DNA of 63,500 bases, the filler included, from Raja brachyura (taxonomy: Eukaryota): the NCBI GenBank assembly GCA_963514005.1. It is 3 parts of 3 records of this genome, joined end to end, with 100 filler letters (N's around TTAATTAATTAA, not from the genome) between each part and the next. Parts side by side here need not be neighbours in the genome. Positions count along the whole stretch, not along the records: positions 46,106 to 63,500 come from OY740804.1; 2 more parts are not named here. The stretch is one strand, 5' to 3'. Each line of letters begins with the position of its first letter. Within the stretch, counting starts at the first letter, position 1. Positions 49,801 through 52,800 of this stretch are shown here, piece by piece. Made by a program: the position numbers and the translations under genes. Under the pieces are notes generated by a model. The model was not told the DNA's origin, made no database searches, and was given only the letters and a program-made list of their open reading frames with translations.

Positions 49801-52800
49801 GGAGTCCATGCTGACCATTGTTCAGCCCTTCACACTAGTTCTATGTTATCCTACTTTTGCATCCACTCCCTACACACAAGGAGCAATTTTACAGAGGGAC
49901 AACTAACCTTCAATCCCTCACATTTTGGGGATTTTGGAGGAAACCAGAGCTCCCGGAGAAAACCCACATGGTCACAGGGAGAGGAAGTTAAGGGTGTGTT
50001 ATTGTCATATGTACCAGAAACAGAACAATCAATTTATACTAGCAGGGTTGATGTACAAATTCCACACACGTTCAACACCCATAGTCAAGATCGAACCTGG
50101 GTCTCTGGCACAGTGAGGCAGCAACTCTACTGCTGCTCCACCGTGCCGCCCACAAGATAGATCTTCATAGTTTCCCAAACACTTATATAACATTTTCATT
50201 GTGTAGAGGCCATAATACAGCCAAGGTTTCATAAATTCATAACTGATGCGAGCAGAATTAGGCCATTCAGCCCATCAAGTGTACTCTAGCCACTCAATCA
50301 TGGCTAATCTATCTTTCCCTCTCAATCCCATTCTCCCCGTAATCCCTGACTTATTACGGTTTGTCGTAATCCTAACACGCTGCTCTCTGTTTTCTGTTCC
50401 AGCGGTGGTCTTACTGGCCTGCCTGCAACTGGGTGAGTCTTTATGCATTTGCAGCCTTGCTTTGCTTTGTGTGAGTGTCACAGAGATATTGTCCTGACCG
50501 CCCTGTCCCTCCCATGCCCAGGCTCTGCCTACAGGCTGGTGTGTTACTTCACCAACTGGGCGCAGAACAGAACAGGAGAGGGTAAATACATGCCTGAGAA
50601 TGTCGACCCTTGCCTTTGCACGCACATCATCTACGCCTTCGCTGGAATGAAGAGCAATCAGATCACCACCGTCAAATGGAATGACCCAAAACTCTACCAG
50701 GAGATCAACAGCCTGAAGAACAAGTACAGTTGCTGAATAAATATTAACGTTGTTTCTCAAATGCGGGGCATTGTATGTGACGTCTACATTGCCCAGTTTA
50801 GTTTATTGTTACCTGTACTGAGGTACAGTGAAAAGTTTTTGTTGCGTGTTAACCAGTCATTGTATTGGATATTCCCCAAACCAATATTCCATAACCCATA
50901 TTCCAGTTAATTTAGTTTAGTTTATTATTGTCACATGTCCATGGTACAACAAAAAGCTTTTTGTTGTGTGTCAACTACTCAGCAAAAAGACTAAACATGA
51001 TTACAGTAGAGCTGGTGTGAATGGGTGATCGATGGTCAGCAGGGTCTTTGACATGGCCCTGTTACACATCCATTTGTTGAAGGTTTTCTCATCTCATCCA
51101 CCTCCCCTGTCTGAAAGGTGACTTGGTCCAGGGGGATATTCAGGAGAAAGTTATTGGACAGGCCAACAGAATCATTGAGCCATAGATTGAGGAAATAGGC
51201 CCTTCAGCCCACATGGTGAGGCTGGCCCATTGCTTACGAAGCCTTGCACCTCATTTTCTGTGACCCCCTTGAGATCCAGACTAAGGCAAATCCCCACAAC
51301 TAAACGTAACACCAAAGGGGCGAAAAAACAGAAGATCCAGAAGTTCCTGAGAAGATCTGAAAATGTTCTGTTGTTCTAAACATCATTCTAAAACCACATT
51401 TTGTCCATTTTCTTTAAGGAATTCAAACCTCAAGACTCTGCTGTCTATTGGAGGCTGGAACTTTATCAAACAGAAGTAAGATGGAAACTTTTTACGTTAG
51501 CATTAGATTAAAAAAAGTTATTTTCCAATTAACTGTGATATGGAATGAATATTGAAAGACACAAAGTGCTGGAGTAACTCCTCTGTAACTCAGCCTGAAG
51601 AAGGATCTTGACCCGAATCATCACCTATCCATGTTCTCCAGAGATGCTGCCTGACCCACAGATTTACTCCAGCACCTGCAGTTTCATGTGTCTGATGAGA
51701 ACAGTGGGTGTGTTTGGTAATGATATACACAGAGATAAATATTGAGGGGATAATTTTACAGTGAACTGTTTCAAGAGTATTATTAAACAGAGCAGTTTGC
51801 AAATTGTAATTTGAACAATATAGGATATTGCTTGCCAAAAAGTAAAAGAACATAATTTTCAGAAAGAATCCTTTCACATGAAACTTCGGCTGATAGGAGG
51901 AAATAGTCGGTGGCATGGTGGCGCAGTGGTAAAGTTGCTGCCTTACAGCGCTTACAGCACCAGAGACCCGGGTTTGTCCGTTCTCCCCGTGACCTGGGTT
52001 TTGTCAGAGATCTTCGGTTTGCTCCCACACGCCAAAGATGTACAAATTTGTAGATTAATTGGTTTGGTATAAATGTAAATTGTTCCTTGTGTGTGTAGGA
52101 TAGTGTTAGTGTGTGGGGATCGCTGGTCGGTGCGGACTGGGTGGGCCGAAGGGACTATTTCTGCGCTGTATCTCTAAACTAAACTAAACGTAATTTTCAG
52201 AAAGAATAATTTCACATGAATCTTCGGATGATAGCAGGAAAAAGGAGTCATTTTTAACCACGAGCATTTAACGAAGGCTTGGGAGAGCCTGTACATGATA
52301 GGATATAGCAGCAGATTCACTGCGTCACTGAGTTTAGCGGCCGTTACCACAGTTCCTTGTGTCTCCGGCACATTTTATTTCTAACTCCTCTCCCCACATT
52401 CATCCCTTCTGCAGACTCATGGCGATGGTCGCCTCATCGGGAACTCGGAAAATCTTCATCAAGTCAGTCATCGCCTTCCTGAGAAAGTACGGCTTTGACG
52501 GTCTGGACATCAACTGGCAATATCCTGGATCTCGAGGAAGTCCTCACATTGACAAGCATCTCTACACTGTCCTGGCTCAGGTGCTGTCAAGTACATCTCA
52601 CTATGGGTTTCGTTAAAGTAAATGGGCCAAACGCAGGCCAAACCCATCCTTTATCTCCACAGATGCTGCCTGGCCCGCTGAGTTACTCCAGCACTGTGAA
52701 ACGTCACCTATCCATGTTCTCCACAGATGCTGCCTGACCGGCTGAGTTACTCCAGCACTTTGTGGGACTAGTGTAGATGGGACATATTCGTCGGTTCGGG

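What the first reader, a model, noticed from the sequence alone, without database searches (positions are those of the whole stretch)
52494..52526. Intact chitinase-family gene with a dead catalytic motif: a probable independently evolved chi-lectin that keeps its CBM14 domain
Seen: the GH18 motif reads [14 protein letters not shown] at 52512-14 and CAA at 52518-20 sit where active enzymes have Asp and the proton-donor Glu, each one base change from GAC and GAA. All 11 exons, splice phases, signal peptide, cleft tryptophans (NW, KWND, GGW, GPW, MVW) and the six-Cys CBM14 are intact. Known: DxxDxDxE is required for GH18 catalysis, D-to-N and E-to-Q are the classic inactivating swaps, and mammalian chi-lectins (CHI3L1, CHI3L2, Ym1/2, OVGP1) carry different motifs and lack CBM14. 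Inference: a lineage-specific secreted protein with two chitin-binding modules and no hydrolase activity, possibly acting in immune recognition, gut mucus, or chitin-containing gels such as those reported in chondrichthyan ampullae of Lorenzini.
Basis: partly seen in the sequence, partly recalled or inferred. Interest (0 to 1): 0.85.

Follow-up and report, generated by a model that had tools for sequence, protein, structure and literature searches.

The report
Catalytically dead skate chitinase paralogue
A skate genome carries an intact, recently duplicated copy of its stomach-type chitinase gene that has lost the residues needed to cut chitin but kept its chitin-binding tail. It is probably a new, independently evolved chitinase-like binding protein, but whether it is expressed has not been tested.

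Summary
Bases 52494-52526 read [11 protein letters not shown], with AAC (Asn138) and CAA (Gln140) where active GH18 enzymes have Asp and the proton-donor Glu.

The gene is an intact 11-exon, 476-aa ORF. All splice sites are AG/GT. It has a signal peptide, all 13 Cys, all 11 Trp and a six-Cys CBM14. A TATA box lies 42 nt before the ATG.

- WNFGT has become WNFIK.
- MTYD has become MTYN (Asp213Asn).
- Tyr34Asn plus Pro36Thr create an N-glycosylation sequon.

Short-read contigs from two coded organisms carry the AAC/CAA form. They also carry a roughly threefold deeper paralogue with GAC/GAA.

In protein trees the gene sits inside the clade of active skate 'acidic mammalian chitinase-like' proteins (100/100 support). 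It is 80-83% identical to them, on a branch about 5-15 times longer. It is therefore a skate-specific duplicate and not an orthologue of any mammalian chi-lectin.

Its substitutions avoid family-conserved positions except in the catalytic cleft. An intact ORF is unlikely under neutral decay.

Best reading (about 0.6): a secreted, non-enzymatic chitinase-like protein. The main rival (about 0.25) is a young, decaying duplicate. Expression, binding and full-length dN/dS are untested. The ampullae of Lorenzini idea has no support here.

The parts
46815..46820 (+). TATAAA box 42 nt upstream of the start codon; putative core promoter
   Evidence: Pattern scan and reading of the sequence. Function is inferred only.
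46857..46881 (+). Coding exon 1: ATG in a good Kozak context (A at -3, G at +4) and the first 8 codons of the signal peptide; donor GTAAGA
   Evidence: Best-scoring candidate in the exon-1 scan. The peptide MAKLLLGT is identical to the N-terminus of P0271.
50403..50432 (+). Coding exon 2: remainder of the signal peptide ([11 protein letters not shown])
50522..50723 (+). Coding exon 3: start of the GH18 domain. It holds Trp31 and the derived Asn34-Arg35-Thr36 sequon (50566-50574; Tyr34Asn, Pro36Thr) and Glu70Lys (50674-76).
   Evidence: Pfam GH18. Alignment to human AMCase shows TNWAQYRPG against TNWAQNRTG. Tyr34 is 100% conserved in 127 relatives. The sequon is unique to this copy.
51419..51475 (+). 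Coding exon 4: GGWNF-IK. Ile102-Lys103 (51465-51470) replace the canonical Gly-Thr of WNFGT, each through two adjacent base changes.
   Evidence: Paralogue contigs read GGC ACC at this place.
52415..52580 (+). Coding exon 5 with the GH18 catalytic motif (52494-52526, [11 protein letters not shown]): Asp136 kept, Asn138 (52512-14), Gln140 (52518-20)
53859..53983 (+). Coding exon 6
   Evidence: Pfam GH18 match is weak.
55313..55439 (+). Coding exon 7: MTYN, with Asn213 (55344-46) replacing the invariant Asp213; Trp218 kept
   Evidence: Alignment to human AMCase shows MTYD against MTYN. Asp213 is 100% conserved in 127 relatives.
56124..56306 (+). Coding exon 8 (includes His270Arg)
56898..57014 (+). 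Coding exon 9
59579..59717 (+). Coding exon 10: end of the GH18 domain (GGAMVW, Trp359)
61791..62050 (+). Coding exon 11: a Ser/Gly/Asp-rich linker, then CBM14 (61907-62047, six Cys, C-terminal Trp475), then stop TAG 62048-50
   Evidence: Pfam CBM_14, 43.5 bits against a cutoff of 22.1. Cys and Trp positions.

Best explanation
This is a real, intact, skate-lineage-specific duplicate of the stomach-type 'acidic mammalian chitinase-like' GH18+CBM14 gene.

Shown: after duplication it lost the mid-Asp and the proton-donor Glu of the DxxDxDxE motif (Asn138, Gln140) and also Asp213. The loop after Trp99 was remodelled (Gly102Ile, Thr103Lys). It gained an N-X-T sequon at position 34 and became markedly more basic. 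It kept the signal peptide, every cysteine and tryptophan, and the CBM14.

Inferred: the product is a secreted protein that cannot hydrolyse chitin. It acts as a non-enzymatic chitinase-like protein (CLP, or chi-lectin). It would bind chitin or chito-oligosaccharides through CBM14, and possibly through the aromatic cleft. This is the same evolutionary route that produced rodent Ym1 from Chia.
For: - Motif and intact 11-exon ORF.
- GH18 and CBM14 domains.
- Alignment of Asn138, Gln140, Asn34 and Asn213 to AMCase Asp138, Glu140, Tyr34 and Asp213. The catalytic roles of Asp136, Asp138, Glu140 and Asp213 are described in PMC11190707 and PMC11182645.
- Placement inside the active skate clade with 100/100 support. 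The terminal branch is 0.21, against 0.00-0.06 for active copies.
- All other batoid and shark copies have the canonical DIDWEYP, GGWNFGT and M[TS]YD motifs.
- The substitutions avoid conserved positions. They hit 12 of 166 columns conserved at 95% or more, against 42 of 240 other skate-invariant columns (Fisher p=0.003). Without five cleft sites the count is 7, p=4e-5.
- Under simulated neutral change giving 54 amino-acid differences, P(no stop)=0.077 and P(43 splice and start bases untouched)=0.08, before counting indels.
- All Cys and Trp are kept, and the GH18 pI is 9.2 against 6.4-7.7 in active copies.
- A TATA box precedes the ATG.
- Contigs carrying the AAC/CAA form occur in two coded organisms.
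Against: - There is no expression evidence. No RNA run held the locus, and the one run guessed to be RNA looked like DNA and did not cover the exons.
- No protein with this motif appeared among 443 fetched relatives or in the top-120 lists that include annotated skate genomes. An annotated orthologue is therefore not in evidence.
- The partial nucleotide comparison with same-run paralogue contigs gives 7 synonymous base changes against 16 base changes in 12 nonsynonymous codons. That is a ratio near neutrality, so relaxed constraint cannot be excluded.
- CBM14 itself has four changes at highly conserved columns.
- There is no canonical poly(A) signal until 808 nt after the stop.
- In organism F only the GAC/GAA form was seen.
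Confidence: 0.6

Rival explanations
1. It is a young, functionless duplicate on its way to becoming a pseudogene. Constraint was lost after tandem duplication, the catalytic residues drifted, and no frameshift or stop has arisen yet.
For: - The rate is 5-15 times that of active copies.
- The partial nonsynonymous-to-synonymous ratio is near neutral.
- Intron flanks differ from the same-run paralogue contigs by only about 2-3%, which suggests a young copy (8 differences in 235 nt and 11 in 382 nt).
- There is no RNA evidence.
- No annotated orthologue was found.
- CBM14 also changes at conserved columns.
- No nearby canonical poly(A) signal.
Against: - At least 54 lineage-specific amino-acid changes with no stop, no frameshift and all 20 splice dinucleotides intact. 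The joint neutral probability is about 0.006 before indels.
- Substitutions are 2.4- to 4-fold depleted at conserved positions.
- All Cys and Trp are kept.
- The change is directional, towards Lys, and two coordinated changes build a sequon.
- If the copy is as young as the introns suggest, it has more amino-acid changes than neutrality predicts.
Confidence: 0.25
2. The gene is functional but is no longer a chitin lectin. The dead GH18 domain has been re-tooled for another ligand, for example anionic glycans, or acts as a competitor or regulator of the active chitinases.
For: - The GH18 pI shifts to 9.2 through many changes to Lys (Glu70Lys, Thr103Lys, Gln117Lys, Gly129Lys, Glu316Lys, Gln373Lys).
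- The cleft residues Tyr34, Gly102 and Asp213 are altered, and a glycan site is added at the cleft edge.
- Ym1 lost chitin binding after a similar history (PMC11190707).
Against: CBM14 and all cleft tryptophans are retained. No ligand data of any kind exist. This is a refinement of the best explanation more than an alternative to it.
Confidence: 0.08
3. It is an assembly or sequencing artefact: a chimera of paralogues or miscalled bases at the two codons.
For: Several near-identical paralogues exist, and the GAC/GAA form is deeper in every run laid.
Against: - Contigs with the window's A and C at 52512 and 52518 are present in X1 at about 12x. Flanking unique intron contigs match with 0 differences at 11.3x.
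- The same form is present in X11, from a differently coded organism.
- The two codons are linked to many other lineage-specific changes spread over all exons.
Confidence: 0.03
4. It is still an active glycosidase or transglycosylase that uses a modified mechanism.
For: Asp136, Tyr141, Tyr212 and the aromatic cleft are retained.
Against: The proton donor Glu140 and the Asp138 that positions the substrate's N-acetyl group are both replaced by amides, and Asp213 is lost as well. The established GH18 substrate-assisted mechanism needs them (PMC11182645).
Confidence: 0.03

Closest known systems
Active skate and ray 'acidic mammalian chitinase-like' proteins (e.g. Amblyraja radiata XP_032898834.1 = P0271, Rhinoraja longicauda XP_078276627.1 = P0424, Leucoraja erinacea XP_055510981.1 = P0431)
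   Same: The protein architecture is the same: signal peptide (identical to P0271's), GH18, Gly/Ser-rich linker and CBM14, with lengths of 472-477 aa against 476 aa here. Identity is 80-83%, and the gene falls in the same clade with 100/100 support.
   Different: All the active copies have DIDWEYP, GGWNFGT and MTYD. This copy has [14 protein letters not shown] and MTYN, a new NRT sequon, a basic GH18 domain and a branch 5-15 times longer.
Rodent Ym1/Ym2 (Chil3/Chil4)
   Same: It is a lineage-specific recent duplicate of the acidic chitinase gene. Glu140 became Gln and one motif Asp became Asn. Its evolution was accelerated and positively selected, and it is secreted (PMC11190707, citing Okawa et al. 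2023, PMC10031810).
   Different: Ym1 has Asn136 and keeps Asp138 (DGLNLDWQ); here Asp136 is kept and Asn138 is derived. Ym1 has no CBM14 (PMC2717817 abstract). The two are not orthologous, because this gene arose within skates.
CHI3L1 (YKL-40), CHI3L2 (YKL-39) and OVGP1
   Same: They have the GH18 fold with a substituted catalytic Glu. They are secreted and have no chitinase activity. YKL-40 retains chitin binding (PMC11190707).
   Different: Their motif substitutions differ (Ala138 and Leu140 in YKL-40). They are old tetrapod or mammalian clades and have no CBM14. The best PDB matches for this gene's exons are AMCase and then Ym1, with CHI3L1 much weaker.
Invertebrate chitolectins (Drosophila IDGFs, oyster Clp proteins)
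   Same: They arose independently by duplication of active GH18 genes, with the proton donor Glu changed to Gln (PMC1945033).
   Different: They belong to unrelated clades, and the IDGFs lack CBM14. That some arthropod GH18-like allergens combine a dead GH18 domain with CBM14 is recalled from memory and was not tested here.

Membership tests
Glycoside hydrolase family 18 (sequence family, PF00704) | Significant match to the GH18 profile along the domain | tested here: met
   Exon-wise hmmscan: exons 3, 5, 7 and 8 score above the gathering cutoff, and exons 6 and 9 match more weakly, covering profile positions 1-299 of 317 in order. PDB matches to AMCase and CHIT1 reach E=3.5e-29.
Active GH18 chitinase (AMCase/CHIT1 type, EC 3.2.1.14) | Catalytic motif DxxDxDxE with the mid-Asp and the proton-donor Glu | tested here: not met
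   The motif reads D-G-L-D-I-N-W-Q, with Asp138 changed to Asn and Glu140 to Gln. These positions are 100% conserved in 127 relatives.
Active GH18 chitinase (AMCase/CHIT1 type, EC 3.2.1.14) | Conserved substrate-contact residues Tyr212-Asp213 (MxYD) and the GGWNFG(T/S) loop | tested here: not met
   The sequences are MTYN and GGWNFIK. Asp213 contacts the sugar in mAMCase (PMC11182645).
Active GH18 chitinase (AMCase/CHIT1 type, EC 3.2.1.14) | Measured hydrolysis of chitin or 4MU-chito-oligosaccharides | not testable with these tools
   Requires a recombinant protein assay.
CBM14 / peritrophin-A chitin-binding domain (PF01607) | Profile match above the curated cutoff and six conserved cysteines | tested here: met
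   43.5 bits against a cutoff of 22.1. The Cys are at 430, 450, 460, 470, 472 and 473, in register with P0271. Four conserved non-Cys columns are changed.
Chitinase-like proteins (CLPs, chi-lectins) | GH18 domain derived from an active chitinase, with the catalytic Glu substituted | tested here: met
Chitinase-like proteins (CLPs, chi-lectins) | Secreted | tested here: inconclusive
   The N-terminal 21 residues are hydrophobic and identical to the signal peptide region of the active paralogue. No signal-peptide predictor was available.
Chitinase-like proteins (CLPs, chi-lectins) | Expressed and maintained by selection (not a pseudogene) | tested here: inconclusive
   The intact ORF, intact splice sites and depletion of changes at conserved columns favour maintenance. 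No RNA run was found, and the partial dN/dS is near 1.
Chitinase-like proteins (CLPs, chi-lectins) | Binds carbohydrate without hydrolysing it | not testable with these tools
   Requires binding assays.
Mammalian chi-lectin clades (CHI3L1, CHI3L2, Chil3/4, OVGP1) | Orthology, that is, branching with those clades | tested here: not met
   The gene nests within the skate, batoid and elasmobranch AMCase-like copies, with tetrapod CHIA and bony-fish chitinase-like proteins as outgroup. Mammalian CLP sequences themselves were not in the tree. Their tetrapod origin is taken from PMC1945033.

The most novel reading that the evidence does not exclude
The gene is a positively selected, skate-specific pseudo-chitinase. 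Its dead catalytic centre, remodelled and glycosylated cleft edge, basic surface and retained CBM14 would let it bind, organise or protect endogenously made chitin without cutting it. Candidate sites are the chitin-containing gel of the ampullae of Lorenzini or gut mucus. That would make it the first vertebrate chitinase-like protein outside tetrapods, and the first tied to endogenous vertebrate chitin.
Probability: 0.1. Interest if true: 0.8.

Novelty: new member of a known kind. Interest (0 to 1): 0.45.

Why it matters
Chitinase-like proteins are a textbook case of enzymes turned into binding proteins. In vertebrates they have been described essentially from mammals, where none keeps the CBM14 module. 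A separately evolved example in skates would give an independent replicate of the Chia-to-Ym1 transition. It would show which steps recur (Glu140Gln, accelerated change around the cleft) and which differ (Asp138Asn in place of Asp136Asn, CBM14 retained). Cartilaginous fishes make chitin themselves (10.1101/687301), so a non-cutting chitin binder has an obvious possible substrate in the animal. If instead the gene is a decaying duplicate, it is an ordinary product of birth-and-death evolution in a tandem chitinase array.

Tried and rejected
- Whole-library phmmer with exon 5 alone returned mostly multi-domain proteins and short fragments. None had the D-D-N-Q state, and it gave no close relative.
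- A profile of two distant full-length proteins plus the exons as separate rows (A1) was swamped by multi-domain chitinases.
- A second alignment with P0271 as scaffold (A2) scattered the exon fragments, so it was not searched.
- Useful relatives came only from querying with fetched proteins (P0190, then P0271) and from cluster listing.
The genomic loci of the active paralogues, and therefore synteny, copy order and full CDS for dN/dS, could not be fetched.
- The only run guessed to be RNA (X19) behaved as DNA and did not cover the exons. Expression is therefore untested.
- The difference table of read laying is truncated (551 rows not shown), so only a partial synonymous/nonsynonymous count was possible.
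- Rfam found nothing in the piece.
- The PDB search of exon 7 at E<=1e-8 was empty and was repeated at 0.01.
- The position of the gene within skates (before or after the Rajidae/Arhynchobatidae split) could not be resolved (AU p=0.33 and 0.40).
- The joined 476-aa translation was built only inside scripts from window.fa and compared locally with fetched proteins. It was never typed or sent to any search or folding tool. Database searches were made exon by exon or with fetched relatives. Structure prediction, an Atlas search and an exact look-up of the joined protein were left out for that reason.
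Full report
**Observation.**
The stretch 52494-52526 reads TTT GAC GGT CTG GAC ATC AAC TGG CAA TAT CCT, which translates to [11 protein letters not shown]. Exon 5 was translated by reference and compared with solved structures. 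It aligns without gaps to mouse and human acidic mammalian chitinase (AMCase), to chitotriosidase and to Ym1. AAC and CAA fall on Asp138 and Glu140 of FDGLDLDWEYP, and Ym1 reads FDGLNLDWQYP at the same place. Each codon is one base from GAC or GAA.

**Gene model.**
Six-frame translation, inspection of the splice sites and a scan for the first exon give 11 coding exons:
- 46857-46881
- 50403-50432
- 50522-50723
- 51419-51475
- 52415-52580
- 53859-53983
- 55313-55439
- 56124-56306
- 56898-57014
- 59579-59717
- 61791-62050

Every acceptor is AG and every donor is GT. The joined CDS is 1431 nt and codes for 476 aa without an internal stop. Pfam finds GH18 in the exons in the expected order, and CBM_14 in the last exon. 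A TATAAA box lies 42 nt upstream of an ATG in a good Kozak context. The first canonical poly(A) signal is 808 nt after the stop.

The joined protein was built only inside scripts from window.fa. It was not sent to any search or folding tool. Those joined steps were left out.

**Further active-site changes.**
The protein was aligned with 127 single-domain vertebrate relatives that all carry D-x-D-x-E. It differs at only 12 of the 166 columns that are at least 95% conserved:
- GH18 domain: Tyr34Asn, Glu70Lys, Gly102Ile, Phe106Leu, Gln117Lys, Asp138Asn, Glu140Gln, Asp213Asn.
- CBM14: four further changes.

Exon-wise alignments to human AMCase confirm TNWAQYRPG against TNWAQNRTG and MTYD against MTYN.
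- Tyr34Asn together with Pro36Thr creates an Asn-Arg-Thr glycosylation sequon that no active copy has.
- All 13 Cys and 11 Trp are retained.
- The GH18 domain has a calculated pI of 9.2, against 6.4-7.7 in four active skate copies.

In the established substrate-assisted GH18 mechanism, Glu140 protonates the glycosidic oxygen and Asp138 positions the N-acetyl group. Asp213 contacts the sugar (PMC11182645). With all three replaced by amides, hydrolysis is not expected. This is an inference from established knowledge, not a measurement.

**Relatives.**
An exon-5 search of the 50%-identity representatives gave no close relative and no D-D-N-Q motif. Queries with fetched proteins and a cluster listing then recovered the chondrichthyan chitinases. 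The nearest are the 'acidic mammalian chitinase-like' proteins of skates, at 80-83% identity:
- Rhinoraja longicauda
- Leucoraja erinacea
- Amblyraja radiata
- a Logan transcript-derived protein

Rays are at 73-75% and sharks at 68-71%. Every one of these has DIDWEYP (or DVDWEYP, DLDWEYP), GGWNFGT and M[TS]YD. The signal peptide of the window's gene is identical to that of the A. radiata copy.

In maximum-likelihood trees the gene lies inside the skate clade (SH-aLRT 99; 100/100). Its terminal branch is 0.21 substitutions per site, against 0.00-0.06 for active skate copies. Its position within skates is unresolved (AU p=0.33 and 0.40).

It is therefore a duplicate that arose within Rajiformes and then evolved about 5-15 times faster than its sisters. 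It is not related by descent to mammalian chi-lectins, which arose within tetrapods (PMC1945033).

No protein with this motif, and no protein closer than 83%, appeared among the 443 fetched sequences or in the top-120 lists. An annotated orthologue in the public skate genomes is therefore not in evidence. The listing limits mean this is not proof of absence.

**Reads.**
Twenty runs from six coded organisms hold parts of the locus, and none is on record as RNA. Contigs of four runs were laid on 51400-57020.
- In X1 (organism A), unique intron contigs match with 0 differences at depth about 11.
- At 52512 and 52518 about 12 of 50.9 depth units carry the window's A and C, and 38.9 carry G and G.
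- X11 (organism D) shows both forms (about 10.6 and 16).
- X18 (organism F) shows only G and G.

The G/G contigs also carry the canonical states at the other derived sites: GGC ACC for Gly102-Thr103, plus Thr107, Gln117 and Gly129. They sit about threefold deeper. They are therefore the active paralogues, probably several near-identical copies. The window's codons are supported at read level, and the same form exists in a second coded organism. X1 may be the assembly's own sample.

**Functional gene or decaying copy.**
Evidence for maintenance:
- The 54 changes at columns invariant among seven active skate copies are depleted at family-conserved columns. The counts are 12 of 166 against 42 of 240 (p=0.003). 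Setting aside five cleft sites leaves 7, p=4e-5.
- The fold's cysteines and tryptophans are untouched.
- Random substitution on the CDS until 54 residues differ takes about 81 base changes. It leaves no stop in only 7.7% of trials, and the 43 splice and start bases stay untouched with probability 0.08. Indels are not yet counted.
- The changes have direction: many are to Lys, and a two-step change builds a sequon.

Evidence against maintenance:
- The partial nucleotide comparison with the paralogue contigs gives 7 synonymous base changes against 16 base changes in 12 nonsynonymous codons. Four codons have tandem double changes. The ratio is close to neutral for these cleft-bearing exons.
- The few intron flanks covered differ by only about 2-3%. 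The copy may therefore be young, or its introns may be homogenised by gene conversion.
- CBM14 is changing too.
- There is no expression evidence.

I put a functional, non-enzymatic chitinase-like protein at about 0.6 and a functionless young duplicate at about 0.25. The remainder is shared between a re-tooled ligand specificity, an artefact and residual catalysis.

**Comparison with known systems.**
The closest analogue in kind is rodent Ym1. It is a recent duplicate of Chia with Gln140 that evolved under positive selection and irreversibly lost chitin degradation and binding (PMC11190707, citing PMC10031810).

The differences are:
- The Asn lies at position 138 here, not 136.
- CBM14 is kept here, whereas mammalian CLPs consist of the GH18 domain alone (PMC2717817 abstract).
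- The lineage is different.

Independent births of chitolectins by duplication, often with Glu changed to Gln, are already documented in insects and oysters (PMC1945033). The phenomenon is known; this would be a new, independently derived member. Literature searches found no description of a chitinase-like protein in cartilaginous fishes. Chitin in skate ampullae of Lorenzini is published (10.1101/687301), but nothing here links this gene to that tissue.

**Limits.**
The paralogues' genomic loci, their full CDS and the neighbouring genes could not be examined. Placement in skates rests on the protein tree.

Noticed in passing
window 57100-59260 (intron 9): Degenerate non-LTR retrotransposon with reverse-transcriptase ORF fragments on the + strand (Pfam RVT_1 at 58040-58483, E=5e-17). 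It contains a 99-nt inverted repeat, 98% complementary (58371-58469 and 58957-59055), which suggests two nested or rearranged copies.
   Followed up: partly
window 51588-53280 and 56664-56851 (introns 4, 5 and 8): Very high-copy interspersed repeats. Summed contig depth reaches 1e5 to 1e7 in all four runs from different coded organisms, with many inverted and back-joined contigs. Much of the 'share of words' in the run search probably comes from these repeats and not from the gene.
   Followed up: no
paralogue contigs laid on window 51408-56460 (runs X1, X11, X18): The active GAC/GAA paralogue class sits at about three times the depth of the window's own form in X1. This fits a tandem array of near-identical active chitinase genes, as the consecutive A. 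radiata and R. longicauda accession numbers also suggest.
   Followed up: partly
P0438 (Leucoraja erinacea XP_055511098.1): Another skate chitinase paralogue, from the second chondrichthyan clade, has GGWAYTTHS in place of GGWNFGT but keeps DIDWEYP and MTYD. This is a different remodelling of the same loop after Trp99.
   Followed up: no
P0001 (5937 aa, 50%-identity representative library): A giant protein with at least six GH18 repeats, all reading FDGLDLAWEYP (mid-Asp changed to Ala, Glu kept). Its origin is unknown.
   Followed up: no
window 62950-63500: Low-complexity CA/CACC-rich sequence, which translates as runs of Thr-His-Pro, flanks the assembly gap at 63170-63383.
   Followed up: no
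window 62051-62858: There is no AATAAA or ATTAAA within 800 nt downstream of the stop codon. Either the 3'UTR is long or a non-canonical signal is used.
   Followed up: no
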